From the IMG/VR virus record IMGVR_UViG_3300046005_000547, positions 170,736 through 234,735 of that record: a stretch of DNA of 64,000 nucleotides; one strand, given 5' to 3'. A model generated the notes under the pieces. That model was not told the DNA's origin. It searched no databases and worked only from the letters and a program-made list of their open reading frames with translations. Shown in pieces: positions 19,397 to 33,995 of the stretch; position 1 is the first letter of the stretch, and each line of letters opens with the position of its first letter. The translations under genes were made by a program, and so were the position numbers.

Positions 19397-19942
19397 TTAT
19401 TTTTCCGAAAGAATTGAATTGATAAAATCTAAGATTTTAGATTGTTCTTCTTTTGTCTCATTTTTGAATTCTGTGATATATTCAGCTAATGAAAAATTGT
19501 TTTGGATATTTGAGATTTTCGTTTCTCTACCGTTCAAGAATTGGTCAGATTGATTAGATCCTCTATCCGCATATCGTTGTTTCAACAAATCTTGTTTACA
19601 TTTTAAGACAACGATATGAAATTCAATATCAGGTTGTTCTGACATCAATTCATATAGATTCATATTTGTTAATCTATCACCTTCCATCAAAATGTTTGAT
19701 TCTGTGACCTTGAACCATTTAACAAATTCTGGTTGAACAGCCAGACTCAACTTATCTGTTCCAGGAAACGTCTCACCTTCATCATATTTCCCTAAGATAT
19801 ACAAATCTAAATCTTTAGAGTATTCAGAATCCACTAATTTGGCAGGTTGTGTTCTTTCCCAAGTGGACGATTTCATGAATTCTCTGAACAGAGTAGATTT
19901 ACCAGTTCCTGGAACCCCACATACAGCAATAACTTTTCTCAT
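19397..19942 (-). CDS. P-loop kinase, 5-hydroxymethyluracil-DNA-kinase-like
   Basis: [17 protein letters not shown] Walker A; ILGKY...FPGTDKLS..VQP; LMEGDRL; TAATG overlap with upstream aGPT-Pplase gene. Confidence 0.75.
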   Translation of the reverse strand: MRKVIAVCGVPGTGKSTLFREFMKSSTWERTQPAKLVDSEYSKDLDLYILGKYDEGETFPGTDKLSLAVQPEFVKWFKVTESNILMEGDRLTNMNLYELMSEQPDIEFHIVVLKCKQDLLKQRYADRGSNQSDQFLNGRETKISNIQNNFSLAEYITEFKNETKEEQSKILDFINSILSEK

Positions 19943-20859
19943 TATATTTTCTCGCAATCTAATTCTGTTATATTCATGTCAATCAATTTTAATCTATTAC
20001 TCAATAGATTATCAACTGAACCTTTCAATTTCTCTGCTATCAGAGAATCATTATTATACTCTAATGCAGCTCTTAATTTAAGAACTTTATCACCTTTGTT
20101 TAATGTCCCTTTAAATGTCTTCCTATAATCGCAAAAGAATGTCTCAATTTCAGTGACGCCAATACATCTATTTGGATTATGAGGACATTTATATTCTTTG
20201 AAGAATTCCAATTCCGATAAGAACAATTCATCTAACAGAGGATCTTGTCTAATCTGTTCCGATGAACGTTTGGAGATAGACGATCCTGTTCTAACCAATT
20301 CAAATCCCGATAATGAACCCTTTGGTATAGTCTTCTTGAAATCATCCGACCAGACTGGTTTGTAATTCATGTCAAATATAGATTCAACCATATCAGCAAC
20401 TTTGAACGCAAAGTATTCACCAAACGTAGGAATCATCTTAGCGGATTCAAGTGATGTCTTCCAATCAACAGTATGTTCTAATACATTATCAATCCATTGT
20501 TCAGGAGTTTTAATCCTCATTTTATCTATCTGAGTGTTATAACTTCTTGATTTAACATTTGTTTCTCTTGAAGCTACATCAATTCTGTCTTTACCAACTT
20601 TTGCTTCCTTGAACAACATTCTCACATAATCATAGTATTCATCGTCTGGTATAGAACATAATTTAATGGAATGTTTTAAATCATATACCATTAGATTAGA
20701 GAAGATTAACCGTTTCTTCTCAGTGTCCGATAATTCAGAATTTCTAATCATTGTATAGATGGGATCCACTTCACCCAGAGCAATATGTTGAAATGAAAAC
20801 TTCCTGAATTCATCTAATAATATATAGACATCATCAAATAGATTATTCATTGGATTCAC
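19942..20859 (-). CDS. aGPT-Pplase / amino-acid:DNA transferase (HhH glycosylase-like fold)
   Basis: GEVDPIY; [12 protein letters not shown]; [11 protein letters not shown]; adjacent to kinase. Confidence 0.7.
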
Positions 20860-21313
20860 TAATCATCTGGTAATATCCTTTATTTGCCAGAGAATCCGCC
20901 TTCTCGTTTCCTGGATGACCAACATGTCCTTTAATCCATACAAATTCAATATCATGTAAATTCATTGCTTCATCTAATCTCCTCCATAGATCCTCATTTT
21001 TAACGGGTTGTTTAGAAGCAGTCTTCCAACCATTTTGTTTCCAACCTTTCATCCAAGATGATGCTCCATCTAATACATATTTAGAATCACAACATAATTT
21101 AACGGGACATGGTCGTTTTAACAATTCTAACGCATTGATAACAGCCATTAATTCCATTCTGTTATTGGTTGTATTACGTTCTCCACCACAGATTTCCTTC
21201 TCAACACCCTTGAATGAAAGGATAGCTCCCCATCCACCATTTGAATTATCTTTACCGTTGGATTTACAAGCTCCATCCGCATAGATTATCACTTGTTCAG
21301 TCATAATTATCAC
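20843..21313 (-). CDS. rnhA: Ribonuclease HI
   Basis: [43 protein letters not shown]. Confidence 0.97.
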
Positions 21314-21506
21314 TTAATGTATATAATTCAGAAATTGTATTCGATTCATGATTCCATAGTTCTGTTCTAATGATTTCATGAATGGAAATAGGTTCAACAT
21401 TTTCATCAGAATGAATCATCCAATCAGCATCGTTGATTGCGTCAATAATGTTCTCGTGAAATGATGATTCAATTTTACTACCAGTTGCATATTGTAATTC
21501 AAACAT
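21297..21506 (-). CDS. Hypothetical protein
   Basis: Packed ORF. Confidence 0.55.
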
Positions 21507-21512
21507 ATTTTG

Positions 21513-22022
21513 TTATAATCCTAATTGGTCTAATCTTTCTCTGACAAAATGAACCGATACCCAAAAGTAATCGGCAAGATCTGTCGCAGAATATCCTTCT
21601 ATAATTTTATTTTTAACTTCATCTTCCGGCATCAAAAAATGATACGCAAATTCATCTGCTTCATTTAATTCGTCGAAGATGTATTTTTGATACGATCCAT
21701 ATTCAATTTCAGGAACATCCGTATGAATTAGATATTCACCAATACATCTGGCAACTAATTCCCGTAAGATAAGGATCGATTTGGCGTAATCATTTACAAT
21801 GAAAATTGGGTTTGAATTTGGACCAATTGAAACCAACGTCTGTAATTCATACCCAAATTCTCCATTATGAAAACATTGTAGATTACCAATTTTATTGGCA
21901 ATTTTGATTACATCAACTGGAAACAGATGTTTTGTATTCAATTCAATACGTTTTATATCAGCATATTCAGCTAATGCTGGATTCAATTCTTTAATTGTAT
22001 TATGCCCTCTAGGTGATTTCAT
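21513..22022 (-). CDS. ImmA/IrrE-family metallopeptidase-like protein with degenerate HExxH
   Basis: IFIVND...RELVARCIGEYLIH (vs R.F..AHELGH..LH); EADEFAYHFLMP..V...LADYFWVS...VRERL. Confidence 0.6.
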   Translation of the reverse strand: MKSPRGHNTIKELNPALAEYADIKRIELNTKHLFPVDVIKIANKIGNLQCFHNGEFGYELQTLVSIGPNSNPIFIVNDYAKSILILRELVARCIGEYLIHTDVPEIEYGSYQKYIFDELNEADEFAYHFLMPEDEVKNKIIEGYSATDLADYFWVSVHFVRERLDQLGL

Positions 22023-22023
22023 A

Positions 22024-22500
22024 TTATAATCCCATTGATTTAGCTGTTGACACAAATTTCATTAGATTACCAAATGATTCTTTACAGAATTCTTGAAATT
22101 TCATTCTCGTTTCTGGTTTGATTTTATTTGAACGTAATGCTCTGATAGCAACACCGGCGGATCTAGTGTCAACTCGTCTTGATGTCCCGTCTTTGAAGAA
22201 CACTTTATGATTTTTATTGGTACAATTTCTTAATTGAGAGATGATGTTATCGAATACAAGTTCATTACCACAAATCATTTCAACTTCTTCGTCTACGTTT
22301 TTTGTTACAGGAGGAACTTTATAATAATCTTTGGCAATTTTATTTTCACTCATCCATGTTTTAACGGATGCTGGAATTTCAGATAACCCCAATAGAGAAG
22401 ATACATGTTCAAAAACTTCTTCATGTAATCCATGGTCAAATTTAGAATCAGATTTGTAGTAAAATGTAGTGACGATTGATAAGAATGTATTTTTGTCCAT
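22024..22500 (-). CDS. Hypothetical protein, paralog family with 24985-25485 and 26667-27335
   Basis: Shared W..EN....YY..P and F.DGTS..VD...KPE.R...SF.NL blocks. Confidence 0.7.
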   Translation of the reverse strand: MDKNTFLSIVTTFYYKSDSKFDHGLHEEVFEHVSSLLGLSEIPASVKTWMSENKIAKDYYKVPPVTKNVDEEVEMICGNELVFDNIISQLRNCTNKNHKVFFKDGTSRRVDTRSAGVAIRALRSNKIKPETRMKFQEFCKESFGNLMKFVSTAKSMGL

Positions 22501-22509
22501 GGTAATCTC

Positions 22510-22800
22510 CTAAATTGTAAAAGTAAGTTCTAAATCAGATGAAATTGAATCGGATACAATAATGTCTTTGTATTCATGTAATCTATTTTGTATATGAATC
22601 AAAAATTGTAATACAACTTTGTTATCATATATTGATAGATATCCTTGTTTTATCGAAAACACTTCGTATTTGCCAATTTTGTTTGTATTAACCAAATATG
22701 AGATTGATACCAATACGTCATCTTGTATTTGGAATAATAAATCTCTAATTCCAGATGAGTGTTCAACATTAGTGATTAATTTGGCAACGTTCTTTGTCAT
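22510..22800 (-). CDS. Hypothetical protein
   Basis: GGAGG RBS. Confidence 0.6.
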   Translation of the reverse strand: MTKNVAKLITNVEHSSGIRDLLFQIQDDVLVSISYLVNTNKIGKYEVFSIKQGYLSIYDNKVVLQFLIHIQNRLHEYKDIIVSDSISSDLELTFTI

Positions 22801-23128
22801 TGTTTTCCTCCAAGTTAAATTGTATCAATACATCATATTCGCCTTGTAATTCCAAATCAGAATCTAAGTTTAATGATATTTTATATCGTCCAAAGTTTTT
22901 CATTAGATGTTTGATGAATGAAAAGATTATCATATTATGTTTGTAATCTAAAATCAAATCTTTTCTGGATGCTTTATAATTATGGATGAATCCAGTTACA
23001 CCATCAATGGTCATTTCTAATTGTAATTCATCAGAACCGTTCTCATCCCAAAAATCAAAAAGAATGTTTCTATGTTCTTCATTGAACCCAGATTCATAAT
23101 TGAAATTAATACCAGAAAAATTACTCAT
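22769..23128 (-). CDS. Hypothetical protein
   Basis: Overlapping ORF in operon. Confidence 0.6.
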   Translation of the reverse strand: MSNFSGINFNYESGFNEEHRNILFDFWDENGSDELQLEMTIDGVTGFIHNYKASRKDLILDYKHNMIIFSFIKHLMKNFGRYKISLNLDSDLELQGEYDVLIQFNLEENNDKERCQINH

Positions 23129-23357
23129 GTATCATTCCTCGTTTTTTAGCTATCTCCGTCGCTTTGTCGATTGCATGTTCAAAATCATTTGTTGCGTATA
23201 ACATTTCACTAAGCGATGGTGAAGATACATCTTGTATACCAATTTTATACTTAGAATAAATTGTTTTCAAAATGACAACCTTAATACCATTCTTTACATC
23301 AGATTCATATTTCTCTGAGAATCTATTTGTAATTGGTTCAATCTTATGTAATTTCAT
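23121..23357 (-). CDS. Hypothetical protein
   Basis: AGGAGG RBS downstream of promoter 23383-23410. Confidence 0.7.
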   Translation of the reverse strand: MKLHKIEPITNRFSEKYESDVKNGIKVVILKTIYSKYKIGIQDVSSPSLSEMLYATNDFEHAIDKATEIAKKRGMIHE

Positions 23358-23382
23358 AATTCCTCCTATTAAAGTAAGTTCT

Positions 23383-23410
23383 ATTATACTACTTTAAACG
23401 ATCTTCGAAA
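23383..23410 (-). promoter_or_regulatory. Early-type promoter
   Basis: TTTCGA-N16-TATAAT. Confidence 0.75.
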
Positions 23411-23446
23411 CTTTAAATAATAACATATTAAATAAGGAGAGAAACA

Positions 23447-24172
23447 ATGAAAGCATTATCTATTGGTATCAACAAATACAACGTAGCACCTCTGAGAGGT
23501 TGTATAACAGATTCTAATGATTTAACAACAGAATTGATTGAAAGGGGATTTGATGTATCGAGGTTGTTAGACGAACAAGCAACCAAATCAAACATTATTG
23601 AAAAGATGCATCAATTATTGTCTGAATCCAAAACAAAATTCATTTTACATTATTCTGGACACGGTTCACAGATCCCATGTTCAAATGGTTCGGAAGAAGA
23701 TGGATTGACTGAAATCCTATGTCCATTCGATTTAATCAATTCAGACGGTTCATGGACATCCAATTATATCACAGATGATGAAATACAACAATTGTTCTCA
23801 GAGTTTCCTGATATTCATATAGAAGTTATTCTTGATTGTTGCCATTCAGGAACCGCAACTAGAGATATTAAACCAACATCCATTACTCCTAGATTCATAC
23901 AATCTCCTGTTATAAATTCATCTAAGAATATTCCATTCGGAGTATCTAATGATAATGTAATCTGTTGGAGCGGATGCACCGATAATCAGACGGCAGCTGA
24001 CTCGTTCATCGACGGGAAATACAGGGGAGCATTTACCACAGCATTTTTGACTGCTTCTGGTAACAGAGAAATAATGTTTAAGAATATTACGGATTACATG
24101 ATTAAGAATGGATATGAACAACGACCAGTCTTAACTTGTACAGATAAACAAAGGACAGAATCAATGTTCTAA
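23447..24172 (+). CDS. Metacaspase / caspase-family (C14) peptidase
   Basis: ALSIGINKY..LRGCITD; HYSGHGSQ (His); ILDCCHSGT (Cys); GAFT; AGGAG RBS and TTAAATA upstream. Confidence 0.93.
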   Translation: MKALSIGINKYNVAPLRGCITDSNDLTTELIERGFDVSRLLDEQATKSNIIEKMHQLLSESKTKFILHYSGHGSQIPCSNGSEEDGLTEILCPFDLINSDGSWTSNYITDDEIQQLFSEFPDIHIEVILDCCHSGTATRDIKPTSITPRFIQSPVINSSKNIPFGVSNDNVICWSGCTDNQTAADSFIDGKYRGAFTTAFLTASGNREIMFKNITDYMIKNGYEQRPVLTCTDKQRTESMF

Positions 24173-24210
24173 AGAAATGGGATAGAATGTAAAGTTCTAT
24201 CCCATTTTTA
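24172..24210. terminator. Intrinsic terminator
   Basis: AAATGGGATAGAA/TTCTATCCCATTT followed by TTTT. Confidence 0.8.
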
Positions 24211-24301
24211 TTAATGAATCATTGCTATCGAGCCGATTATGTAAATCAATATAGATGTTACAACCCAGCAAGATACAAACAATACTCCATTTATAATTCT
24301 C

Positions 24302-24988
24302 TTAATCATATTTGAATTCCTTTATATTATTTGCGTTCATCAACAATTCTTCTATTTCATGTATGTCTGGAAACTTATTGTCTACATTCAGAATAGGATA
24401 CATCGTCAATTCATTATTTTCATACATTGAATTACATTTAGTTCTTAATTGGAGTTCCTTACTTTGTAATTCATCTTTACTCAATTTCTGATAACGTCCA
24501 ATATCATTTAATTCTGGTAATCTACCCTCCAATAGACATTCAGCAACGTAAAGACATCTTGAAATATGAAATGATTTTCGATTCTTTTTATCTTTACTTG
24601 TATTCAATAATTTCAAATCAAATTTAGCTCTACCGACGAATCCTTTTATAATTTTGTACGTTCTACATGTTAATAATTTATCCGAATTCGTTATGTCTGT
24701 GAATAACACCAATTCAGCAAAAATGTTAGATTCACCAGATAATAAATTTTTGTAAAACGTAGATTCAGTTGTCAACATCCATTGAGTGTTATTTTCGATG
24801 TCATCAAATTGAAAACAATGGATGTTTGGATAAATTCTATCTGAATTGAAAATATCGTCGAGTATTAAAACAATATCCTTGTCCGATTGTTCTGTATTGG
24901 TTTTATGTAAATGGGATCCAAACGTATATCTAGAAATTGTATATTGTTTCAATATATCAAATTGTTCTTTTGTAATTTTTATGTTCAT
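24302..24988 (-). CDS. Pol-beta-family nucleotidyltransferase (RlaP/YcgL-like)
   Basis: FGSHLHKTNTEQSDKDIV (GS...SDxD). Confidence 0.7.
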   Translation of the reverse strand: MNIKITKEQFDILKQYTISRYTFGSHLHKTNTEQSDKDIVLILDDIFNSDRIYPNIHCFQFDDIENNTQWMLTTESTFYKNLLSGESNIFAELVLFTDITNSDKLLTCRTYKIIKGFVGRAKFDLKLLNTSKDKKNRKSFHISRCLYVAECLLEGRLPELNDIGRYQKLSKDELQSKELQLRTKCNSMYENNELTMYPILNVDNKFPDIHEIEELLMNANNIKEFKYD

Positions 24989-25485
24989 TTTTCTCCTTTC
25001 ATCATTTCTCTGTTTAATTCAACCACTTTCAATAGATTGTTATAATTTTCGGAGACGTAATTCTGTAATTCAAACCTATTTTCTGGTTTGATGTATTCAT
25101 CCGTTAAGATTGAATATAATTCTTTTAATGTACGTTTGTCGATCTTCTTGGAGGTTCCATCTGTAAATTTGATTTCATTATTATATCGAATTGCTTTATT
25201 ACATTGGATGATAATAGGTTCTAATGGTTTTGGTTGTTTCTTCAGATTAAGGTATTGTTGAACAAAAATATCAACATCTTCTTCGATCTTGGGGATTTCA
25301 TAGAATCCTTTTGAACGAGTATTTTCTTTCATCCATTGTTTGATTCCTTTGGGTGATGGGATGTTAAGATATTCATTTGTTTCTTGGAAGAAATACTCTG
25401 GGATACCGCCTGAATTCTGCGTATCTGATAAGAAGTAAATTGATGAGATTAGAGATAGGTATTGATTAAGTGATAATTCTTTCAT
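24985..25485 (-). CDS. Hypothetical protein, paralog family
   Basis: WMKEN...FYEIP; FTDGTSKKID; KPENR; YNNLL. Confidence 0.7.
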   Translation of the reverse strand: MKELSLNQYLSLISSIYFLSDTQNSGGIPEYFFQETNEYLNIPSPKGIKQWMKENTRSKGFYEIPKIEEDVDIFVQQYLNLKKQPKPLEPIIIQCNKAIRYNNEIKFTDGTSKKIDKRTLKELYSILTDEYIKPENRFELQNYVSENYNNLLKVVELNREMMKGEK

Positions 25486-25499
25486 TATTGTATTTGTTT

Positions 25500-26200
25500 A
25501 ATTGTTAGTATAATGTATTAGATATAATCGAAAAAGAGTCTTGAAGTAATATAGAAAATAATAAAAGAATATTAAAATGAAACAATAGAACTAACTCAAA
25601 CCGTCGACATAGTCTAGTATACTGGGTTTTTATCGATTTCGAAAGGAGTAATTAGACGTTGATTATTACACATTCGATAACCTTGGTCTCTTTCGATACG
25701 TGATTATAATTGTTTCGATGTTAATGTTTAATTTAACAGTCTATATTGTTGTTTTAAGATGTATTAAATGTATCCTGTAGAGTTGATTGACATAATAAGG
25801 AAAGATTCCATTAGAGCGGATTATTGGACAAATAATGGATGTTAATGATTCAACATAGAATTGATATATTGTAAATTTCAAACAATAAAAATCCCGACAG
25901 AATTGTTCATTCTTATCGGGATCTGAGACTCAGAGATTTTATGTTGAATTATTGTATAGAATATATTCGATAAAGACATTAATATACTCTATAAAGAATC
26001 TAATAGTAATATAAAAGAATATAGAAAAACAATAGATACACTAACTGAAACGTCGACATAGTCTAGTATACTGTATTTTTTATCATTTCGAAAGGAGTAA
26101 TTAGACTCTGTAATAATCATATTTATTCGATATCCAGTCAATCTTAAGACGTATTCGATGTTCCTTTCGATACATGATATAATCAGTTTCGATGAATAAC
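25500..26200. repeat. Tandem cassette array A: two GTCGACATAGTCTA-anchored units, period 449 bp
   Basis: Anchors at 25603 and 26052; minus-strand promoters TTTCGA-N17-TATACT at 25616-25644 and 26065-26093; hairpin element 25738-25841; terminator 25884-25923. Confidence 0.9.
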
Positions 26201-26488
26201 TTCGATAGATTCAATCTTAACATTATTTGATTTACGTCTATCCAACATATATTCATTGACATTTAATCTAACGAAATTCTCCGATCCTGATACAATCTTA
26301 AATTTACAGATAATATCATATCGACCATCAACCAAGTTTGAATTGTTAAAATTACCGTCAGTTACTCGTTTTAATATGAAGTCAATGTTTGGACTGAACC
26401 ATTTGAATCTCTTGGTAAAATCCAATCTATCTTTTGAATTTTCATATTCCTTCAAACACATCGCTCTGTACATTATCATATCCATCAT
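26183..26488 (-). CDS. Hypothetical protein sitting inside the repeat scaffold
   Basis: RBS+ATG supplied by left end of hairpin element H3; 3' end overlaps TTCGA boxes. Confidence 0.7.
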   Translation of the reverse strand: MMDMIMYRAMCLKEYENSKDRLDFTKRFKWFSPNIDFILKRVTDGNFNNSNLVDGRYDIICKFKIVSGSENFVRLNVNEYMLDRRKSNNVKIESIEVIHRN

Positions 26489-26491
26489 TTA

Positions 26492-26587
26492 ATCCATCTT
26501 ATTTGTCGTTTAAACAACGTTTCCATTATATCCTGTAGAGTTGATTGACAATATCAATAATCGTCAACTATGGACAAATAATGTCCA
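26492..26587. repeat. Inverted-repeat element copy H3
   Basis: Core TCCTGTAGAGTTGATTGACA at 26531-26550; arms TCCATCTTATTTGTC / GACAAATAATGTCCA. Confidence 0.85.
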
Positions 26588-26619
26588 TAATACAATAGGA
26601 ATAATAAACCTTTACGCAT

Positions 26620-26656
26620 AAAAAAATCCTAATCAACTTTTCAGCCGATTAGGATC
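26620..26656 (-). terminator. Intrinsic terminator
   Basis: ATCCTAATC/GATTAGGAT stem with A7 tract on + strand. Confidence 0.75.
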
Positions 26657-26666
26657 GTATTAACAA

Positions 26667-27335
26667 TTATTTGTTTTGTTCAATAAGTTCCAACAAATTA
26701 TTGTAAGATTGACCACTATATGTTTGGAATGTCAATCTATGTTCAGTTTTGTAATCTTCAGAAGTCAATAAATCAACACCAGCTTGAGCAATTTCTCTTG
26801 GAACAATCAATGATTCGCCATTTTCAAACACGGTTTTAATAGTTGATTCCGAATCAATAGATTTATACAACTGGATTAAAATGTTTGAGAATTTTTGTTC
26901 TTCTTCGTCTTCCTCAACAATTTCGGTATCAATGATTTCTTCTTCAATATCGTCATCACCTTCTCTGTTGGTTTCATCAACCAAATCTTTCAAAATTTGA
27001 ATACCTTTTTGAAATTGAACTTGTTTAACATCAACAGTTTTTACGTCAGTTGGTTTTTTAACGGTGGTTCTTAATCTAGAACCATTAATAATGTCAGTCA
27101 AATCAACAACGATTTCAGGCAATTTGTACATTCCAACATCAGCACGATTATCTTTGAACCATTGATTTGCGCATTTAGGTGGTGAAGTTCTCCCCAACAA
27201 ATAGTTTGTTTCAAGAACCATTGGTTTAGTGATGAAAGGAACTTCTTTAGTTGAATTGTCCCAAACATAACGCAAGATTGAAGTGTATAATTCAACTGTG
27301 TTTCTTCTTTCAGTTTTGTTTTCAACGTTTGACAT
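26667..27335 (-). CDS. Hypothetical protein, paralog family (with acidic linker)
   Basis: QWFKDN...MYKLP; FENGES; YNNLL. Confidence 0.7.
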   Translation of the reverse strand: MSNVENKTERRNTVELYTSILRYVWDNSTKEVPFITKPMVLETNYLLGRTSPPKCANQWFKDNRADVGMYKLPEIVVDLTDIINGSRLRTTVKKPTDVKTVDVKQVQFQKGIQILKDLVDETNREGDDDIEEEIIDTEIVEEDEEEQKFSNILIQLYKSIDSESTIKTVFENGESLIVPREIAQAGVDLLTSEDYKTEHRLTFQTYSGQSYNNLLELIEQNK

Positions 27336-27364
27336 GATAATCCGCCTTATAATATAGTTTGTTT

Positions 27365-27424
27365 AAAGTTCATTGGATTCTTCCAACTTGAACTCTATTA
27401 TAGTGGTTATCTTAATCATCGAAA
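27365..27424 (-). promoter_or_regulatory. Early promoter plus 5' stem-loop leader (PeSL-like)
   Basis: TTTCGA-N16-TATAAT at 27397-27424; 27365-27402 identical to 55430-55467. Confidence 0.8.
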
Positions 27425-27431
27425 GAGATTT

Positions 27432-28637
27432 CTATAACTCGTACAAAGAAATATTTTTATCTTCGTTACCCGTAAATTTTAACATATTTCTAGGATTATA
27501 TTTTGTTTCGAATTCTATTCTTTCTTTTTCGTCAAACCATTCATTATAATGGGAAACGCACAATTTTCCTCCAATTGATTTTTCTAAATTAAACCCCATT
27601 ATTTCTCTGGAGTTTGGTTCGTCTTTGTAATAAGTGTGGGTGTCAAAATTCAATCCTTTATCATATAATGCACTAGAATATTCTTTTTTTGTTTTTGCGA
27701 ATTCTTTCGCAAATTTACCTTTCGTATTCATAGCGATTACGAAAGGTTTAAAATTTATTTCACCTTCCCAAGAATAATATAATTTATCGTATAATTCTGC
27801 GATTTTATTGGTATTTACGTACAATTGGTAGAATAAAGGATTATGTTTTATCGTTTTTCTTAATTGACATAAACAAGTTTCTAAATTATAAATATCGATA
27901 TGGATTATAGAATTATCGTTACAATAATGATATATTTCTTTAACCTTTTCTTCGAAAAATAATAATCTATTTATGTCCGTATTTTTTGTTTTTTTAATTA
28001 TTTGCCATTCTTCTTTATTTAAAACCCAACAAAGAGCATTCCATTGCGACCAACTATTTTGGTTTTCCAACTGTAATTCCGGTATATCTATATCATAATC
28101 GAAAAACTCATACATCATTTGTTTCGTTAACCAAACCCCCATTCTACCGTATCCATGTAAACTTTGTAATTCTTCGGTTAAATTATTGAAATTAGTTATA
28201 GGATTTCCAGTTTTGGTTAATTTTTCAAAATGTTCGATTATGTCAATGTTTTCGTATCGTTCTTTTAAATCTTTAAATAATCCGACAAAATTCCTATAAC
28301 ATTTCAAAGTATCAGTCGCGTAGAAACATCTTTTCGAATTATTTTCAACGAATTCGTTTATTTCTTCTACAGAAGTTTCTAAAAAATTAGGAAACTTCTG
28401 TAGAATTATCATTGGCCAATGACTCCGATAAGATTGACCAAAAATTAAGCAATAAAAAAGTTTTTGTTTATCTGTTAAATTCATTTCGGAAGCGATAACT
28501 TTACCATGGTGCCAATGATCTATATCTCCTTCTAACATTAAAACGTTTGTATACCTTCTAAACAATTCCATTCTATTTTCAGGTAATCTCCAATCTTTAT
28601 AATTCGATTCTTCTAATTCATAATCAAATAAACTCAT
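27432..28637 (-). CDS. Second aGPT-Pplase / amino-acid:DNA transferase
   Basis: DWRLPENRMELF; EGDIDH; LHGYGRMGVWL; NLETCLCQLRK; immediately downstream of a TET/JBP gene. Confidence 0.7.
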   Translation of the reverse strand: MSLFDYELEESNYKDWRLPENRMELFRRYTNVLMLEGDIDHWHHGKVIASEMNLTDKQKLFYCLIFGQSYRSHWPMIILQKFPNFLETSVEEINEFVENNSKRCFYATDTLKCYRNFVGLFKDLKERYENIDIIEHFEKLTKTGNPITNFNNLTEELQSLHGYGRMGVWLTKQMMYEFFDYDIDIPELQLENQNSWSQWNALCWVLNKEEWQIIKKTKNTDINRLLFFEEKVKEIYHYCNDNSIIHIDIYNLETCLCQLRKTIKHNPLFYQLYVNTNKIAELYDKLYYSWEGEINFKPFVIAMNTKGKFAKEFAKTKKEYSSALYDKGLNFDTHTYYKDEPNSREIMGFNLEKSIGGKLCVSHYNEWFDEKERIEFETKYNPRNMLKFTGNEDKNISLYEL

Positions 28638-28767
28638 TATTTTTTTCCTTTATCTTATTTGGTTTAATCTTCATTTAGAAATCTATTTAATAATATATTT
28701 GCGTTCGCTGTTATATCTCCAGTAAAACGAAAAATGGAGAAACCCGTTAAGGTCTCTCCAATCTTAT

Positions 28768-30138
28768 TTAAAAGAATTCATCCAATGATGTAGATTCAAA
28801 TTCATCTTTAAGGTCTTGATGATATTCATCAATCCATTGTTGCCCTTTCTCATGTTCTAATAAGAAATCGTACCATTCTTTCGATGTCCACATTTTTTGG
28901 AAAACGCCGTTCCAAAGTGGGCGCCATAATGGATGCGTCTCATCTTTACGTCTGGTGTCAACAAACAAACGTCTATAATCTTCATATTCCTTTGAACCCA
29001 GACCCAACATGTCTTCTCTGAAATAAGCAATAACAGAAATACGTTCACCACCTTCTTCGGTTTGAATGAATTCAGTGTTTCCATGTAAAATTTCATGATT
29101 ATTGATTAAACATAAATCTCTTGGTCTAATGTTAACTGCAATTCTATATGCAGGAAACACTAGATAACAACCTTCATAATTCTCATTTTTAGATAACACC
29201 AATAGATTTGAGAACCCTGATGTCAAATCACCGGCATCAAAATGATAATGCGTACGAAACGATTTATTTACAGTCACTGTTGTAAATACGGTTTCGGGAA
29301 TCAAAAATGCTGGATCCATTTTGTCGGCAGCTGCTCTCTGGTTACCCCATCTCCAAGGTAATAATTCCTTGAATCCTCCATTCAAACGTTTGAAAAATGG
29401 AAATGATAATTTGAATTTATCAAAATGATGGTCGGTGTATCCGGTTGCTCTACCATAAGGGATTCGTGGGTATCTTGAATACCATCCAGCAATACCAGAA
29501 TATGCTGGAGCAGCATAAACTGTATTAGACACCCAATTTTTCATTACAAATAATGCTCGTTCTTTGGCATCTTCTTGGTCCATGGATTCTAATTCTGAAA
29601 CCAATTCATCAAATTTAAAATTGTCTGGAGTTTTATTAGTCAACCATACAGAAGTTCTTAAACCGTTGTTAGATGAATTATCTTGTTGTTTGAGTTGTTC
29701 TAATGGATCCGAACCGTCTAATGTACTTGTTCTATCAATAAAGTATTCTAAAATATCATGTTGACGTTTAGTGAATCGTTCGCGTCGTTCATTATCTGTT
29801 ATTTCTTCTAACATACCAGCAGCAAGTCCGCGATTGTTAGATAATACAGCAGCATCTCTTAATCCGCCGTACGCTCCATCGTGTTCTTCAATAGTGAAAA
29901 ATCCTTTACGATATTTAAATGCGATACGCCGTTCATCAGAACCTTTATCGCATGAATTACATTCAGATACACAAGTTGCTTTGGTTGATAAATCGCATAA
30001 TGGTTCCATGTATACATCAACGTCTTCGTCGATATCTCCCCCAGGTCCAATTAAAATATCATAATGAGATCTATCTGCACCATGACCCAATAGGTGGTCT
30101 ACGTTATGTTTTTCTTTTGCTACAATAATTCTTGCCAT
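28768..30138 (-). CDS. TET/JBP-family 2OG-Fe(II) dioxygenase, paralog A
   Basis: PETVFTTVTVNKSFRTHYHFDAGD (HxD); ILHGNT; ERISVIAYFRE; YPRIPYGRAT. Confidence 0.9.
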   Translation of the reverse strand: MARIIVAKEKHNVDHLLGHGADRSHYDILIGPGGDIDEDVDVYMEPLCDLSTKATCVSECNSCDKGSDERRIAFKYRKGFFTIEEHDGAYGGLRDAAVLSNNRGLAAGMLEEITDNERRERFTKRQHDILEYFIDRTSTLDGSDPLEQLKQQDNSSNNGLRTSVWLTNKTPDNFKFDELVSELESMDQEDAKERALFVMKNWVSNTVYAAPAYSGIAGWYSRYPRIPYGRATGYTDHHFDKFKLSFPFFKRLNGGFKELLPWRWGNQRAAADKMDPAFLIPETVFTTVTVNKSFRTHYHFDAGDLTSGFSNLLVLSKNENYEGCYLVFPAYRIAVNIRPRDLCLINNHEILHGNTEFIQTEEGGERISVIAYFREDMLGLGSKEYEDYRRLFVDTRRKDETHPLWRPLWNGVFQKMWTSKEWYDFLLEHEKGQQWIDEYHQDLKDEFESTSLDEFF

Positions 30139-30318
30139 ATGTTTGCCCTTTTGTTTAAAATTACATTATACTCTATAATGTTTAAAATAGAAATCTTCTT
30201 AATACATTACATATAATACACAAATCTAATGGAGTTCAGAATAATATCTGAACTCCATGTTTATCACCAACTAATTGTCCATGTATAATTTACAGTGGAA
30301 TGTCATTTTCGATATTCA

Positions 30319-31047
30319 TTATTGTTTCCGTTTAATCAAAGTTTGTTTCCAATCAATTTCACCAGACTGGATAGCGTCATACAATTTATCGTCTAAAGAT
30401 ATTGATTCGTATGAATTATCATTGATACCTTCACCCCACATTTCTGTTTCATCTCTGTCTTCCATAATAGGTTTAAATCTGTAGAACATTCCCTCTGGTA
30501 TTAAATTGATACCAACCAAATCAATAGAAAAATACTGCATATCTTCGGAACAATTCTTATTCCATACGTTACCAGTAATGAAATCATTGTATGTGATGAC
30601 ATCTTTATTTACATTAGTTCTGAAAATAATAGTTGAATAATTATATAATTCGTTCCCAATATCAAAGAATGTTTTAATATACTCGTATTGACCGTTTCTA
30701 CCATTATCCCAATATCTTTCTTTGCGCGTTGGTGCCGTTTCAAATTCAAACAATTCGCCGTCTTCATCCATGGCAGCACAAACTGCCCAATCGTTTTTGA
30801 ATTCATAATTTAACAATCCAGGATAAATTGGTTTATCGATTGTTCCGTTGTAATGATTTACAAAATCTCTAATATCAGTATCAGAATATCCATTATCATT
30901 CAAACAATTATGAATTTCTTCAAATAATTCAATACGTTCTAATTCTTCTTTAATCAAATTTACAGGAACATTAACTTGTTGATTGGTTGATGTATCTTTC
31001 ATGTTTAAAATGTAATCCGATTGTTTGGTTGTGTTAATAATAATCAT
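30319..31047 (-). CDS. Hypothetical protein
   Basis: Long ORF with AGGAG RBS. Confidence 0.7.
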   Translation of the reverse strand: MIIINTTKQSDYILNMKDTSTNQQVNVPVNLIKEELERIELFEEIHNCLNDNGYSDTDIRDFVNHYNGTIDKPIYPGLLNYEFKNDWAVCAAMDEDGELFEFETAPTRKERYWDNGRNGQYEYIKTFFDIGNELYNYSTIIFRTNVNKDVITYNDFITGNVWNKNCSEDMQYFSIDLVGINLIPEGMFYRFKPIMEDRDETEMWGEGINDNSYESISLDDKLYDAIQSGEIDWKQTLIKRKQ

Positions 31048-31059
31048 TTGGTTCTCCTG

Positions 31060-31596
31060 TTATTTTGTTGGGTCTAAATTCATTGATGCTTTACTTCTTT
31101 TGATGGCTTGTTCTCTGGTTGGATACGCTAATCCATTTTCAATATAAAACAATGATGAATGTTCATACTTCAACGTCGTATAAAAATTAGGATTCATGTT
31201 TGCTATATAGAAAATAGACCCTTCTCTAAATCCATCTCTTTGACCGTCTTCAACAAACCAACCATTTACGTTTATTTTTGGTAATTCTTTAATTCTTCTG
31301 TATTTTACTGTTCCTGATCGATGGTCATGAAAATCGGGGTGTTCTGTACAATTAACGTATCCAAATTGTGTTAATTTTTGCCATTTTTCATATGGTGTTG
31401 AATTATGTTTCCAATCTTCTGAATATGCATCAATCATAATGTTAATATCTCTACAATCGGAGAATTCCGTTACAATACAATTATCTCGATACATTCTATT
31501 ACATTTCCCGCATTTAAATTCATTTTGGTATCTAGAATCAACGCCCTTTTTAGATATAATACCATAACAATCTTCACAATGTAATTCATCTTGCAT
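31060..31596 (-). CDS. Hypothetical protein; N-terminal Cys pairs, C-terminal domain shared with 41065-41556
   Basis: CEDC..CGKC; INVNGWFVEDG...GLAYPTREQAIKRSKASMNLDP. Confidence 0.7.
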   Translation of the reverse strand: MQDELHCEDCYGIISKKGVDSRYQNEFKCGKCNRMYRDNCIVTEFSDCRDINIMIDAYSEDWKHNSTPYEKWQKLTQFGYVNCTEHPDFHDHRSGTVKYRRIKELPKINVNGWFVEDGQRDGFREGSIFYIANMNPNFYTTLKYEHSSLFYIENGLAYPTREQAIKRSKASMNLDPTK

Positions 31597-31626
31597 TTCT
31601 TATACTCTTAAAATTAACATATTTCT

Positions 31627-31654
31627 ATTATACTTTATAAAACGAAATAAGAAA
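31627..31654 (-). promoter_or_regulatory. Early-type promoter
   Basis: TTTCTT-N16-TATAAT. Confidence 0.55.
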
Positions 31655-31659
31655 GAATC

Positions 31660-32577
31660 TTATGTAATAAAAGTATGGTTTGTTGATTTAATATGTCTAG
31701 TTACATGGGATAGACTGTTTGTTTTAAATGAACAATCTTTACAATAATGCATTACATCAGGCGTTCTATTTGGATTTCTATCAGGATTTTGTTTACAATT
31801 ATCATTATGATATTTTGTTATAATCGTTTTATTTTCAGATTCAAATCCACAAACATTACAAAAATGTTTCTTTACGTTTCTATCTGGATTCTGTTTACAA
31901 TTATCTCCATGGTATCTAACATAATTACCTTTATTAGAATACACAAATTCTTCAGAACAATGAATACAAACAAATTTCGGTTCAATCGTGTCTAAGAATG
32001 ATTTGGTTTCCAACATTTTCTTGTTCATTCTATCTCGTTCTTCAGATGACATATTAACATGCCATTCTGTAACAAGTTCAGATCTTAAATCTTTTATGTA
32101 ACTTTGACTGATTCTAATTTTCTCACTAATTGCATTTTGTTCTTCTTGCGTTCGTTTGGAAATAGTGTCAGCAATTTGATTCTTAATCCTTAATTTTTCT
32201 TCTTCTGATTTGGATTTTAAATTTTTAGAATGTTCTATATTTTTGAAAATAGACAATTCAGAATATTGTCTACTTGTGATTCCTTTTTGGTATACTCTAC
32301 ACAATTTATGTAAAGTAGGAAACGATTTCTTTAATATCCAATGGGCAACATAATGTTGACGTTTTGTTAAAATTATTCTATTCCAAGGAAATAATGTAAA
32401 ACATTCAAATTCAGGAAACATATCACTACCTCTAGGTAAAATATGATGTTTGTCTGTATGTTTCATCTTAGGGTGATTCTTTCCTTGTAAAGATGTAATA
32501 AATTTTATGTATCTATTCAGATAATGTATATTGTGCGGTTTGGTGTGTAAATGTTCTATAAATGTATTGTTGTTCAT
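31660..32577 (-). CDS. HNH homing endonuclease with C-terminal zinc-finger repeats
   Basis: KHHILPRG...NRIILTKRQHYVAHWIL; two CxxC...YH.DNCKQNPDRN repeats. Confidence 0.85.
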   Translation of the reverse strand: MNNNTFIEHLHTKPHNIHYLNRYIKFITSLQGKNHPKMKHTDKHHILPRGSDMFPEFECFTLFPWNRIILTKRQHYVAHWILKKSFPTLHKLCRVYQKGITSRQYSELSIFKNIEHSKNLKSKSEEEKLRIKNQIADTISKRTQEEQNAISEKIRISQSYIKDLRSELVTEWHVNMSSEERDRMNKKMLETKSFLDTIEPKFVCIHCSEEFVYSNKGNYVRYHGDNCKQNPDRNVKKHFCNVCGFESENKTIITKYHNDNCKQNPDRNPNRTPDVMHYCKDCSFKTNSLSHVTRHIKSTNHTFIT

Positions 32578-32633
32578 GTTTAGTAATAATTGAAAAATGG
32601 AGATAGAATTGACCTATCTCCATGTGTATATTA

Positions 32634-33995
32634 TTATCCCATTAGATCTTCTAATGAAACTGATTCGAATTTGTCTTTTAAATCTTGATGATATTCATCT
32701 AACCATTGTTGTCCTTTATCGTGAATCAATAAGAAATCATACCATTCTTTTGAGTCAAACATATGAGGATAAACCCCATTAAAGAATTCATGCCATTTTG
32801 GATTTGTTTTATCATGTTTAGAATTTTCAACAAATTGTTTTCTATGGTCTTCATATTCTTTAGAACCACATTCTAACAATCCATGTCTAAAATATGAGAT
32901 GACGCTTACTCTATGTGCATCTGGTTCATTTTTGATAATTTTTGTATTACCATGCATGATTTTACTATTATCGACAATTAACAAATCTCCTGGTCTTACA
33001 TTAACAGCAATTCTATATTCAGGGAATACTAGATACCCACCAGAGTAATTATCATTGTTAGATAATACCAACAAATTAGAAATAGCATCCTGTAAATTGG
33101 CTGCATCGAAGTGGCAACCCGTAACCCACGTGTTATTTACAGTTAGAGTGGTGAACACTGTTTCGGGAATCAAAAATGCTGGATCGATTTTATCTGTGGC
33201 ATCTTTTTGTAATTGCCATCTTCTTGGCATTAAATCTCTGAATCCTCGATTTAATGACTGGATAAATGGGTAACATTTTTTAAATTTATCAAAATGATGG
33301 TCTGTATAAGCAGTAGCTCTACCATAAGGTTGACGAGGATATCTACTCCACCACCCACAAACTCCACTCATGGCAGGAACCGCCATTGACGTTCCAGATA
33401 CATGTTTCTTATGGATTCGGATAGCTTCTGCTTGAGCATCTTCTCTACTCATCTTTGATAATGAATCCACCCATGATTCAAAATCAAACATTTCCTCACC
33501 ATACAGAACCCAGACGACACCCTTTGTTACAGTGGTATCATCTTTACGTTTCCGTAATTCAGATAATGTATCGTCATCATATAATGAATCTAACGGATTC
33601 ATGAAGTAATCAAAGATTGAACGTTGGTAATCAGATACATAATTACGTTTGGCATCTTTGTTGTTCGATTTATCGCGTTCTGTATATTTACCAGCAGCAG
33701 TTCCTCTATTGTTTGAAATAGTGGCAGCATCTTTCAATCCTTCTAATGCCATGTCTTGTTCTTCTTTTGTGAAGAAGTTCTTACGAAACTTGAACGCAAC
33801 TCTGAATTCATCAATACCTTTATCGCATGAATGACATTCAGATACACAATCAAGTTTTGTTGATAGGTCACAGACTGGTGGAGTATAAACGTCCGCATCT
33901 GATTCAATTAAAACATCATAAAATGAATCATCAATGAATGTTCCCAGTAAATGTTCACAATCAAGTTTTTCTTTTGCTACAATAATTTGAACCAT
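32634..33995 (-). CDS. TET/JBP-family 2OG-Fe(II) dioxygenase, paralog B
   Basis: PETVFTTLTVNNTWVTGCHFDAAN; IMHGNT; HRVSVISYFRH. Confidence 0.9.
   Translation of the reverse strand: MVQIIVAKEKLDCEHLLGTFIDDSFYDVLIESDADVYTPPVCDLSTKLDCVSECHSCDKGIDEFRVAFKFRKNFFTKEEQDMALEGLKDAATISNNRGTAAGKYTERDKSNNKDAKRNYVSDYQRSIFDYFMNPLDSLYDDDTLSELRKRKDDTTVTKGVVWVLYGEEMFDFESWVDSLSKMSREDAQAEAIRIHKKHVSGTSMAVPAMSGVCGWWSRYPRQPYGRATAYTDHHFDKFKKCYPFIQSLNRGFRDLMPRRWQLQKDATDKIDPAFLIPETVFTTLTVNNTWVTGCHFDAANLQDAISNLLVLSNNDNYSGGYLVFPEYRIAVNVRPGDLLIVDNSKIMHGNTKIIKNEPDAHRVSVISYFRHGLLECGSKEYEDHRKQFVENSKHDKTNPKWHEFFNGVYPHMFDSKEWYDFLLIHDKGQQWLDEYHQDLKDKFESVSLEDLMG

What the first reader, a model, noticed from the sequence alone, without database searches (positions are those of the whole stretch)
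19397..33995. Candidate TET/JBP-initiated, post-replicative thymine hypermodification pathway
Seen: two intact TET/JBP dioxygenases (28768-30138, 32634-33995), an aGPT-Pplase directly downstream of one (27432-28637), and a second aGPT-Pplase coupled (TAATG) to a P-loop kinase (19397-20859). ThyX is present (7249-7830). No dUMP hydroxymethylase, C5 methyltransferase or glycosyltransferase is seen in this window. Established: in ViI, M6, PaMx11 and phiW-14, 5hmdU enters DNA through the nucleotide pool, is phosphorylated by a DNA kinase and is then substituted by amino-acid:DNA transferases. JBP oxidises T to 5hmU in DNA, whereas characterised phage TETs act on 5mC. Inference: here normal T is incorporated, oxidised in DNA, phosphorylated and substituted with two different nucleophiles or in two sequence contexts. 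Such linkage has been predicted computationally, but I know of no biochemical demonstration, and the product base(s) could be new.
Basis: partly seen in the sequence, partly recalled or inferred. Interest (0 to 1): 0.88.

Follow-up and report, generated by a model that had tools for sequence, protein, structure and literature searches.

The report
Phage thymine hypermodification genes, TET-initiated
A large uncultured T4-like phage carries two TET/JBP DNA oxygenases, a DNA-base kinase and two amino-acid:DNA transferases. Together they most likely turn ordinary thymine in its DNA into a bulky modified base. This kind of gene set is already described and partly tested, so this is a well-equipped new example rather than a new system.

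Summary
All five genes are intact on the minus strand: TET-B 32634-33995, TET-A 28768-30138, AADT1 27432-28637, AADT2 19942-20859 and a P-loop kinase 19397-19942. AADT2 and the kinase overlap in TAATG. A ThyX homologue lies at 7249-7830.

The interpretation (T to 5hmU in DNA, then phosphorylation, then amine substitution) is the best-supported reading, but it is not new.
- Lee et al. 2021 described viral contigs where a TET_JBP gene replaces dUMP hydroxymethylase beside these genes.
- Burke 2021 and O'Toole 2026 showed that phage TET/JBP enzymes oxidise T in DNA.

The TET family here has over 2000 members of about 450 aa, mostly on contigs with T4-like replication genes. Of 36 related loci, 24 have an AADT and/or the kinase downstream, and the others sampled have glycosyltransferases. 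Two other phages carry a compact helicase-TET-AADT1-AADT2-kinase operon.

Special to this phage and one close relative are two diverged TET copies. No ParB or amidotransferase was detected.

One caveat: the genome has an intact C5 cytosine methyltransferase about 54 kb away, outside the window, so 5mC remains a possible substrate. About 135 kb of the genome was not read. The product base is unknown.

The parts
32634..33995 (-). TET-B: TET/JBP-family Fe(II)/2-oxoglutarate dioxygenase (5mYOX), 453 aa, next to the gp41-like helicase
   Evidence: PF12851 E 1e-15. It is 53% identical to TET-A over its full length. It keeps H295, D297, H348 and R362. It departs from the family at 20 of 147 columns that are at least 90% conserved, including A299, N300 and A304 just after HxD, and S344. 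An 83% orthologue exists in a 249-kb relative.
28768..30138 (-). TET-A: TET/JBP-family dioxygenase (5mYOX), 456 aa, directly upstream of AADT1
   Evidence: PF12851 E 1.6e-20. H299, D301, H352 and R366 are invariant in 34 sequences, and C48, C56, C60 and C63 are nearly invariant. AlphaFold2 model: pLDDT 85.9, pTM 0.79. Best structural matches are human TET2-DNA (E 2e-10) and Naegleria Tet.
27432..28637 (-). AADT1: amino acid:DNA transferase (aGPT-Pplase) homologue, long form, 401 aa
   Evidence: PF18724 E 3.6e-9, above cut-off. Closest cultured relative is Cr30 AGS81008 (25% identity). E253 and C257 in the ETxxC motif are invariant across AADT types. This type follows the TET in 23 of 36 related loci. 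A profile of this type finds no solved structure.
19942..20859 (-). AADT2: amino acid:DNA transferase of the PaMx11 gp46 / PhiW-14 gp109 type, about 302-305 aa
   Evidence: PDB 8z2m glycinyltransferase E 1.4e-5 over residues 22-263 of the query and 14-267 of the chain. Counterparts of gp46 D24, K150, D175, E243 and C247 are present (residues from PMC11472151). Best cultured-phage hit is the PhiW-14 gp109 putrescine:DNA transferase (E 1e-7). An 82% orthologue exists in the 249-kb relative.
19397..19942 (-). P-loop kinase of the 5-hmdU DNA kinase family, 181 aa, start overlapping the AADT2 stop (TAATG)
   Evidence: PF18751 at 29.8 bits against a cut-off of 27, plus AAA_18. Walker A GVPGTGKST. 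Overlap confirmed. About 42% identical to kinases in the TET clusters of Cr30 and L006.
28735..28760 (-). Terminator-like hairpin with T-run between TET-A and AADT1
   Evidence: 11-bp stem with 5 GC pairs, then TTTTT. A similar hairpin at 32597-32623 follows TET-B. The region has 12 such sites against 5.9 +/- 2.4 in shuffles.
32597..32623 (-). Terminator-like hairpin just after the TET-B stop
26667..27335 (-). Conserved neighbour of unknown function (222 aa) downstream of AADT1; membership in the pathway is uncertain
   Evidence: 70% identical to the gene in the same position in the 249-kb relative. No Pfam or PHROG family. Two weaker paralogues lie at 24985-25485 and 22024-22500.
7249..7830 (-). 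ThyX homologue, the presumed phage source of dTMP; context for the pathway, not part of the cluster
   Evidence: PF02511 E 6e-42. Aligns to M. tuberculosis ThyX with RHR changed to RSK and HAQ changed to EAQ. The RSK form is shared by 119 of the 120 best homologues.
31660..32577 (-). Homing-endonuclease-like ORF inserted between the two TET genes; not a pathway enzyme
   Evidence: phrog_655 E 1.4e-16. No counterpart between the two TETs of the relative L007.

Best explanation
This is a post-replicative thymidine hypermodification system started by a 5-methylpyrimidine dioxygenase.

1. The phage replicates with ordinary dTTP. It encodes ribonucleotide reductase and a ThyX homologue.
2. TET-A and TET-B use Fe(II) and 2-oxoglutarate to hydroxylate the C5 methyl of thymine in double-stranded phage DNA, giving 5-hydroxymethyluracil. 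They probably prefer different sequence contexts.
3. The P-loop kinase phosphorylates the new hydroxyl, giving 5-phosphomethyl-dU.
4. AADT1 and/or AADT2 displace the phosphate with the amine of a free amino acid or polyamine, giving an N-alkylated thymine adduct.
5. No decarboxylase, radical-SAM, flavin or acetyltransferase tailoring gene was recognised nearby, so the adduct may be the final base.

The likely purpose is to protect phage DNA from host nucleases.

Shown here: intact genes, catalytic residues, the predicted fold and conserved gene linkage. Inferred from the families and from published biochemistry on relatives: every chemical step, thymine as substrate, the nucleophile and the biological role.
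For: - Family assignments and catalytic residues.
- TET fold.
- The kinase start overlaps the AADT2 stop (TAATG).
- Linkage: among 36 related viral loci with at least 7 kb downstream of the TET, 16 have GATase+AADT+kinase, 6 have long AADT+kinase (this window's type), 1 has AADT+GATase and 1 has the kinase only.
- Two independent T4-like contigs carry helicase-TET-AADT1 type-AADT2 type-kinase as one compact block.
- TET-kinase adjacency also occurs in Methylophilales phage Melnitz and in Microbacterium phages. Cr30 carries TET, an AADT1 type and the kinase within about 9 kb.
- No C5 methyltransferase homologue lies within 1.06 Mb of TET-anchored loci, and none lies in the window.
- No Thymidylat_synt-family gene was seen in the roughly 100 kb of this genome examined.
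- Literature: phage TET/JBP enzymes oxidise T in DNA (PMC8256090, PMC13229309). The kinase and AADT activities are reconstituted for ViI, M6, PaMx11 and PhiW-14 (PMC8989533, PMC11472151). TET_JBP replaces dUMP hydroxymethylase in some viral contigs (PMC8989533).
Against: - No enzyme of this roughly 450-aa TET subfamily has been assayed. A subset of ParB-less clade C1 enzymes showed no activity on T or 5mC in E. coli (PMC13229309, PMC8256090). I could not place these TETs in that clade scheme.
- An intact C5 methyltransferase exists in the same genome.
- Characterised phage enzymes use 5mC about as well as T in vitro.
- AADT1 lacks the gp46 Lys150 counterpart and has no detectable match to the solved AADT.
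- ThyX has a non-canonical motif.
- About 135 kb of the 234.7-kb contig was not examined.
Confidence: 0.6

Rival explanations
1. The substrate is 5-methylcytosine, not thymine. The phage's own C5 methyltransferase methylates cytosines. The TETs then make 5hmC, and the kinase and AADTs build a cytosine hypermodification.
For: - An intact C5 methyltransferase (351 aa, PF00145; motifs SPPC, ENV, QKRER, GMSVPP) lies at contig positions 144,956-146,011.
- 5mYOX97 and 5mYOX176 act comparably on 5mC and T in vitro (PMC13229309).
- Burke et al. raised the idea of kinase and aGPT-Pplase acting on TET-made 5hmC.
Against: - The methyltransferase is about 54 kb from the TETs, at the end of a different gene block.
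- Its nearest relatives (57% identity) are in Flavobacterium and Bacteroides phages of 37-72 kb (annotated 'DNA methyltransferase' where annotated at all; their TET content was not checked), so it looks like an ordinary orphan methylase.
- None of about 85 TET-anchored loci (1.06 Mb) has a homologue within 10 kb.
- Characterised phage 5mC-TETs sit beside their methyltransferase (PMC8256090).
Confidence: 0.13
2. Division of labour: one TET paralogue and one AADT act on thymine, and the other pair acts on 5mC or on a second thymine context. One genome then carries two chemically different hypermodified bases.
For: - The two TETs are 53% identical.
- Each differs from the family at 20 of 147 highly conserved columns. 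TET-B differs right after the metal-binding HxD.
- The duplication predates the split from the 249-kb relative.
- The two AADTs are barely alignable with each other.
- The C5 methyltransferase is present.
- Different phage T-dioxygenases have different sequence preferences, YTY versus NTR (PMC13229309).
Against: - The AADT pair also occurs with a single TET, so it is not tied to the TET duplication.
- In ViI only one of two AADT paralogues was needed (PMC8989533).
- Nothing here tests substrate specificity.
Confidence: 0.15
3. 5hmU enters through the nucleotide pool, as in ViI, M6 and PhiW-14, using a dUMP hydroxymethylase elsewhere in the genome or a neofunctionalised ThyX. The TETs do something else.
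For: - About 135 kb of the contig is unread.
- The ThyX homologue has RSK for RHR and E for the conserved H, so its product is not certain.
Against: - No Thymidylat_synt-family hit in the window or in contig positions 134,956-174,523.
- All known pool-level hydroxymethylases are ThyA homologues (my own knowledge).
- The TET-kinase-AADT adjacency in many phages argues that the TET makes the hydroxyl.
- Lee et al. found TET_JBP contigs lacking the hydroxymethylase.
Confidence: 0.05
4. The cluster is partly inactive or acts on host rather than phage DNA, for example by marking or damaging the host chromosome.
For: A subset of ParB-less clade C1 TETs was inactive in E. coli assays (PMC13229309).
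Against: - All catalytic residues are intact in both TETs.
- The family has over 2000 members at about 50% identity with conserved synteny, which indicates selection for function.
- The downstream enzymes make sense only if the hydroxyl is built upon.
Confidence: 0.05

Closest known systems
Phage thymine dioxygenases (5mYOX) of O'Toole et al. 2026, PMC13229309: ParB-dependent clade C1 and ParB-independent clade C2
   Same: - TET/JBP fold and HxD...H...R centre.
- No adjacent C5 methyltransferase.
- Linked to P-loop kinases, AADTs and, in relatives, glutamine amidotransferases or glycosyltransferases.
- Proposed role as the priming step of T hypermodification.
   Different: - These TETs are about 455 aa, with a conserved N-terminal region of about 230 aa carrying four cysteines and a C-terminal helical tail of about 80 aa. 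The assayed ParB-independent enzymes are about 290-300 aa.
- No ParB was detected near them.
- No member of this subfamily has been assayed.
- There are two diverged copies here.
Thymidine hypermodification pathways of ViI, M6, PaMx11 and PhiW-14 (5-HMUDK plus AADT; PMC8989533, PMC11472151)
   Same: - A P-loop kinase of the same Pfam family.
- AADT2 aligns over its full length to PaMx11 gp46, with the key residues kept.
- A pair of divergent AADT paralogues, as in ViI.
   Different: - Those phages put 5hmdU into DNA through a dUMP hydroxymethylase and exclude dTTP. Here a TET and a ThyX homologue are present and no hydroxymethylase was seen.
- No PLP, radical-SAM, FAD or acetyltransferase tailoring enzyme was detected.
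Metavirome contigs with TET_JBP beside T-hypermodification genes (Lee et al. 2021, Fig. 2, sequences 22-25)
   Same: The same predicted logic: TET_JBP in place of dUMP hydroxymethylase, next to the kinase and AADT.
   Different: I could not check whether those contigs carry this long TET subfamily. This window adds a second TET and lacks the amidotransferase common in relatives.
Trypanosome JBP1/2 and base J
   Same: Oxidation of T to 5hmU in DNA, followed by decoration of the hydroxyl. Relatives of this TET are followed by TET-associated glycosyltransferases.
   Different: In this window the hydroxyl is predicted to be phosphorylated and replaced by an amine, not glucosylated. There is no J-binding or SNF2 domain, although the Cr30 and DLP6 homologues are annotated as 'SNF2 DNA repair protein'.
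Phage C5-methyltransferase/TET systems that make 5hmC and glycosylated 5hmC (Burke 2021)
   Same: Post-replicative oxidation by a phage TET, followed by further decoration.
   Different: Those TETs sit next to their methyltransferase and act at GpC. Here the only methyltransferase found is about 54 kb away, and relatives of these TETs have none nearby.

Membership tests
TET/JBP (5mYOX) dioxygenases, PF12851 | Profile match above the curated cut-off | tested here: met
   73.4 and 57.8 bits against a cut-off of 34.9.
TET/JBP (5mYOX) dioxygenases, PF12851 | HxD...H iron triad and the 2-oxoglutarate-binding Arg | tested here: met
   TET-A has H299, D301, H352 and R366, invariant in 34 sequences. 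TET-B has H295, D297, H348 and R362.
TET/JBP (5mYOX) dioxygenases, PF12851 | Double-stranded beta-helix fold resembling solved TETs | tested here: met
   Model pLDDT 85.9. Foldseek matches: human TET2-DNA E 2e-10, NgTET1 E 3.5e-9, CMD1 and CcTet.
TET/JBP (5mYOX) dioxygenases, PF12851 | Oxidises T (or 5mC) in DNA | not testable with these tools
   Needs an enzyme assay or nucleoside LC-MS.
ParB-dependent phage T-dioxygenase subclass (PMC13229309) | A cognate ParB-like gene next to the dioxygenase | tested here: not met
   No ParBc or any ParB-like family among the ORFs of at least about 70 aa scanned by Pfam between 16.5 and 37 kb, at E up to 0.001-0.1 depending on the call. None in the precomputed Pfam of four related contexts. 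A very divergent ParB fold cannot be excluded.
ParB-dependent phage T-dioxygenase subclass (PMC13229309) | C-terminal extension beyond the last conserved core residue | tested here: inconclusive
   A helical tail of about 80 aa follows the core (residues about 376-456).
ParB-independent clade C2 T-dioxygenases (5mYOX89/97-like) | Stand-alone enzyme of about 290-300 aa clustering with 5mYOX89 | tested here: inconclusive
   Length is 453-456 aa with an extra conserved N-terminal region. Clade placement was not testable without the reference sequences.
5-hmdU DNA kinase (5-HMUDK), PF18751 | Profile match above cut-off and an intact Walker A motif | tested here: met
   29.8 bits against a cut-off of 27; GVPGTGKST.
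5-hmdU DNA kinase (5-HMUDK), PF18751 | Encoded next to an AADT | tested here: met
   TAATG overlap with AADT2. The same adjacency occurs in L095 and L096 and in many of the related loci listed.
5-hmdU DNA kinase (5-HMUDK), PF18751 | Close similarity to the assayed kinases (ViI gp67/gp243, M6 gp54, PhiW-14 gp37) | tested here: not met
   tblastn against phages at E up to 1e-3 found only Cr30, Melnitz and Microbacterium phages. The relation to the assayed kinases rests on the Pfam profile only.
Amino acid:DNA transferase (AADT / aGPT-Pplase), PF18724 | Profile match above cut-off | tested here: met
   AADT1: 37.1 bits against 26.2 (met). AADT2: 24.2 bits (below cut-off), but it matches the solved gp46 at E 1.4e-5 over its full length, and several relatives carry PF18724.
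Amino acid:DNA transferase (AADT / aGPT-Pplase), PF18724 | Counterparts of gp46 residues D24, K150, D175, E243 and C247 | tested here: met
   AADT2: all five are present (D32, the K of FKVADM, D172, E239, C243), with W146 changed to Y and F173 changed to W. AADT1: only the E and C of ETxxC are clearly kept (E253, C257). The Lys position is Leu in the five-sequence alignment, so for AADT1 this feature is only partly met.
Pool-level hmU hypermodifying phages (ViI, M6, PhiW-14 type) | A phage dUMP hydroxymethylase (ThyA family) | tested here: not met
   None in the window or in contig positions 134,956-174,523. About 135 kb was not read, so this is incomplete.
Phage C5-MT/TET 5hmC systems (Burke clades A/B) | A C5 methyltransferase adjacent to the TET | tested here: not met
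   The nearest one found is about 54 kb away. None lies within 10 kb of the TET in about 85 related loci.

The most novel reading that the evidence does not exclude
The roughly 450-aa, four-cysteine, ParB-less TETs of T4-like phages may be a third, unassayed subclass of phage 5-methylpyrimidine dioxygenase. In this phage the two diverged copies, together with two unrelated-looking AADTs, would run two parallel channels. These could be different thymine contexts, or thymine plus the 5mC made by the phage's own methylase. One genome would then carry two different, possibly undescribed, hypermodified bases made without any pool-level precursor.
Probability: 0.2. Interest if true: 0.7.

Novelty: new member of a known kind. 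Interest (0 to 1): 0.42.

Why it matters
In the papers I could search, no one has reconstituted the whole TET-started route from ordinary thymine to a hypermodified base. This phage offers a compact set with no ParB activator and no amidotransferase: TET, kinase and AADT. That makes it a convenient test case.

The TET subfamily is very abundant in environmental T4-like phages, with over 2000 clusters. If it is active, a large share of aquatic myovirus DNA may carry modified thymine. That would affect restriction and CRISPR escape, sequencing bias and enzyme discovery.

A cultured relative, Caulobacter phage Cr30, carries the TET, an AADT1-type gene and the kinase, so the prediction can be tested at the bench now.

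Tried and rejected
- Megablast of the 15.5-kb region against phage records: no match.
- Pairwise BLAST of the two AADTs, and profile comparison of the AADT1 family with AADT2: only the ETxxC motif aligns. They are not recent paralogues.
- AADT1 alone and its 14-sequence profile against PDB sequences: nothing.
- TET profile against PDB sequences: no TET hit. I therefore could not map the residue three positions after HxD (Asp in the family, Asn in TET-B) onto the cytosine-N4-contacting residue of Naegleria Tet or TET2 that I recall. That stays a lead from memory.
- The N-terminal 230 residues modelled alone gave a poor model (pLDDT 60). This region is not an independent domain, and I ran no fold search on it. 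A fused ParB-like domain is not supported.
- ParB was looked for by Pfam in all neighbouring ORFs and not found.
- The methyltransferase's best solved relative is the carboxymethyltransferase CmoX (8yf3). The Cx-SAM-binding Arg350 is Met here, and no CmoA or ligase lies beside it, so I do not call it a CmoX.
- Walking the genome: one look-up failed on a gene-start mismatch. About 40 kb was read upstream and 10 kb past the window end before look-ups ran low.
- Iyer et al. 2013 was not held.
- One literature search (Cr30 + JBP) returned only irrelevant papers.

Full report
**Origin and setting.** The window is the last 64 kb of IMG/VR contig 3300046005_000547 (234,735 bp). It also occurs, reverse-complemented, in 3300046004_000591. 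GC content is about 31%, and nearly all genes are on the minus strand. The gene content is that of a large T4-like phage:
- ribonucleotide reductase subunits and ThyX;
- UvsX and Sir2;
- a gp41-like DnaB helicase.

No phage record matches at the DNA level.

**The observation.**
- Pfam gives Tet_JBP for 28768-30138 and 32634-33995, and ADDT for 27432-28637 (above cut-off).
- Pfam gives ADDT for 19942-20859 just below cut-off, and Ploopntkinase3 plus AAA_18 for the ORF at 19397-19957.
- The weaker AADT2 call is rescued by a near full-length match to the solved PaMx11 gp46 glycinyltransferase (E 1.4e-5).
- AADT2 keeps the counterparts of gp46 D24, K150, D175, E243 and C247, which the structural paper lists as DNA- and nucleoside-contacting residues (PMC11472151).
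- The best cultured-phage hit of AADT2 is PhiW-14 gp109, the putrescine:DNA transferase (PMC8989533).
- The kinase ATG overlaps the AADT2 stop in TAATG, and its Walker A motif is intact.

**The dioxygenases.** The two TETs are 53% identical over their whole length. In an alignment of 34 family members the HxD...H triad and the Arg are invariant. So are several N-terminal motifs, and four cysteines (CX7CX3CX2C) are nearly invariant.

The AlphaFold2 model of TET-A is confident (pLDDT 85.9). It matches human TET2-DNA best, over about 470 alignment columns, then Naegleria Tet, CMD1 and CcTet. The first 230 residues modelled alone fold poorly. They are therefore an integral elaboration of the core, not a separate module, and there is no sign of a fused ParB.

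The family is huge: 2041 clusters at E below 1e-5, typically 447-449 aa and about 50% identical. Members occur on contigs up to 249 kb, and every context read carries T4-like replication genes. It includes cultured phages Cr30 and DLP6, where the protein is mislabelled 'SNF2 DNA repair protein'.

In a tree, TET-A and TET-B fall in one well-supported clade of eight sequences. Each pairs with its own orthologue in a 249-kb relative, so the duplication predates the split of these two phages. Each copy departs from the rest of the family at 20 of 147 highly conserved columns. In TET-B these include three positions directly after HxD and the His four residues before the second iron ligand. That fits altered specificity rather than decay.

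**Comparative genomics.** I fetched 79 related viral loci and scanned them with HMMs built locally from the window genes and their relatives. Thirty-six loci have at least 7 kb downstream of the TET:

| Downstream content | Loci |
|---|---|
| Glutamine amidotransferase, AADT (326-355 aa) and kinase | 16 |
| Long AADT (390-422 aa) and kinase, no amidotransferase (this window's type) | 6 |
| Partial (AADT+GATase, or kinase only) | 2 |
| None of these | 12 |

Of the 12 loci with none of these, the five I sampled with Pfam gave a TET-associated glycosyltransferase (two loci), a GT1 glycosyltransferase (one), a UDP-galactopyranose mutase (one) and nothing recognisable (one). The family therefore always looks like the maker of a hydroxyl that a second module then decorates.

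AADT2 homologues led to two further T4-like contigs. Their gene order is UvsX, helicase, TET, a 343-358-aa protein, AADT2 type, kinase. A profile comparison shows that the unnamed protein is an AADT1-type relative (96.7% probability, E 3e-10).

The window's five genes are thus an expanded version of a compact four-gene operon. The additions are a second TET, a homing-endonuclease-like ORF (absent from the close relative) and about 7 kb of unrelated genes between AADT1 and AADT2. Only this phage and its 249-kb relative have two TETs.

Terminator-like hairpins follow each TET gene.

**Which base is the substrate?** Evidence for thymine:
- no C5 methyltransferase in the window;
- none within 10 kb of the TET in 1.06 Mb of related loci;
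- a ThyX homologue beside the reductase genes;
- no ThyA-family gene in the roughly 100 kb of this genome that I could read.

This is the same reasoning used by Lee et al. 2021 and O'Toole et al. 2026.

Against certainty, walking upstream found an intact C5 methyltransferase at contig positions 144,956-146,011. Its best solved relative is the carboxymethyltransferase CmoX, but it lacks the key Arg. Its closest phage homologues are in Flavobacterium and Bacteroides phages of 37-72 kb. It looks like an orphan methylase, and it hints at a Bacteroidota host.

The assayed phage enzymes handle 5mC and T about equally in vitro, so some 5mC oxidation is possible. The ThyX homologue also belongs to a conserved subfamily with RSK in place of RHR, so its product is inferred.

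**Mechanism.** Most likely: T to 5hmU by the TETs, 5hmU to 5-phosphomethyl-dU by the kinase, then displacement of the phosphate by an amine through AADT1 and/or AADT2. Every step is inferred from family membership, conserved linkage and published biochemistry on relatives. Nothing here identifies the nucleophile. I recognised no tailoring enzymes.

**Relation to what is known.**
- The kind is known. It was predicted by Iyer et al. 2013 (as cited in PMC8989533) and seen in viral contigs by Lee et al. 2021.
- The first step has been demonstrated for other phage TET/JBP enzymes.
- The kinase and AADT steps were reconstituted in pool-level hmU phages.
- Still open: activity of this long, ParB-less TET subfamily, reconstitution of the whole route, and the product.

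I file this as a new member of a known kind, with some variant features.

**Limits.**
- About 135 kb of the genome is unread.
- I could not place the TETs in the published clade scheme.
- ParB absence rests on sequence profiles.
- Several cluster neighbours have no recognisable family.

Noticed in passing
window 7249-7830 (-): The ThyX homologue has RSK instead of the canonical RHR ThyX motif, and Glu instead of the conserved His in RxxxHAQ. RSK is shared by 119 of the 120 best metagenomic homologues (about 190 aa). It is a conserved divergent subfamily whose thymidylate synthase activity is only assumed.
   Followed up: partly
L091:18740-19795 (contig 3300046005_000547 positions 144,956-146,011, outside the window): An intact C5 DNA methyltransferase with an SPPC motif. 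Its best solved relative is the cytosine carboxymethyltransferase CmoX (8yf3), but the Cx-SAM-binding Arg is Met. Closest phage homologues (57% identity) are in Flavobacterium and Bacteroides phages, hinting at a Bacteroidota host.
   Followed up: partly
window 31660-32577 (-): A homing-endonuclease-like ORF (phrog_655, no Pfam hit) sits between the two TET paralogues. It is missing at that place in the 249-kb relative.
   Followed up: partly
window 26667-27335, 24985-25485, 22024-22500 (-): Three paralogous ORFs of unknown function. The first is conserved (70% identity) directly downstream of the AADT in the close relative.
   Followed up: partly
window 23447-24172 (+) and 21513-22055 (-): A caspase-like Peptidase_C14 gene (E 1e-26) is the only sizeable plus-strand gene between about 9.8 and 46 kb. 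It lies close to an M78/IrrE-like peptidase ORF, inside the stretch that separates AADT1 from AADT2.
   Followed up: no
window 38591-39280, 59630-62431, 63220-63690; L010 just beyond the window end: A set of NAD-related and anti-defence genes. In the window: Sir2, a 933-aa protein with a weak PARP catalytic-domain hit, and Acb1. Just past the window end: two TerD genes, PRPP synthetase, NAMPT, a NADAR domain and a PIF1 helicase.
   Followed up: no
window 20843-21313 (-): An RNase H1-type gene (PF00075, E 9e-45) whose end overlaps the start of AADT2. A separate T4-type RNase H/FEN gene lies upstream of the window (L089:19774-20670).
   Followed up: no
L060:3448-4236, L062:11377-12186, L087:2796-4127, L003:11375-12385: In relatives lacking AADT and kinase, the same TET family is followed by a TET-associated glycosyltransferase (PF20691), a GT1 glycosyltransferase or a UDP-galactopyranose mutase. 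One locus also has a DruA-like gene. This suggests base-J-like glycosylated thymine in those phages.
   Followed up: partly
relatives of the AADT1 type: AADT length tracks the presence of the amidotransferase: 326-355 aa when a GATase gene is present, 390-422 aa when it is absent (401 aa in this window). The extra C-terminal region has no recognisable family.
   Followed up: no
window 2727-3146 (-) and 55435-56136 (-): A SegE-like GIY-YIG endonuclease near the reductase genes, and a class-3 lipase gene.
   Followed up: no
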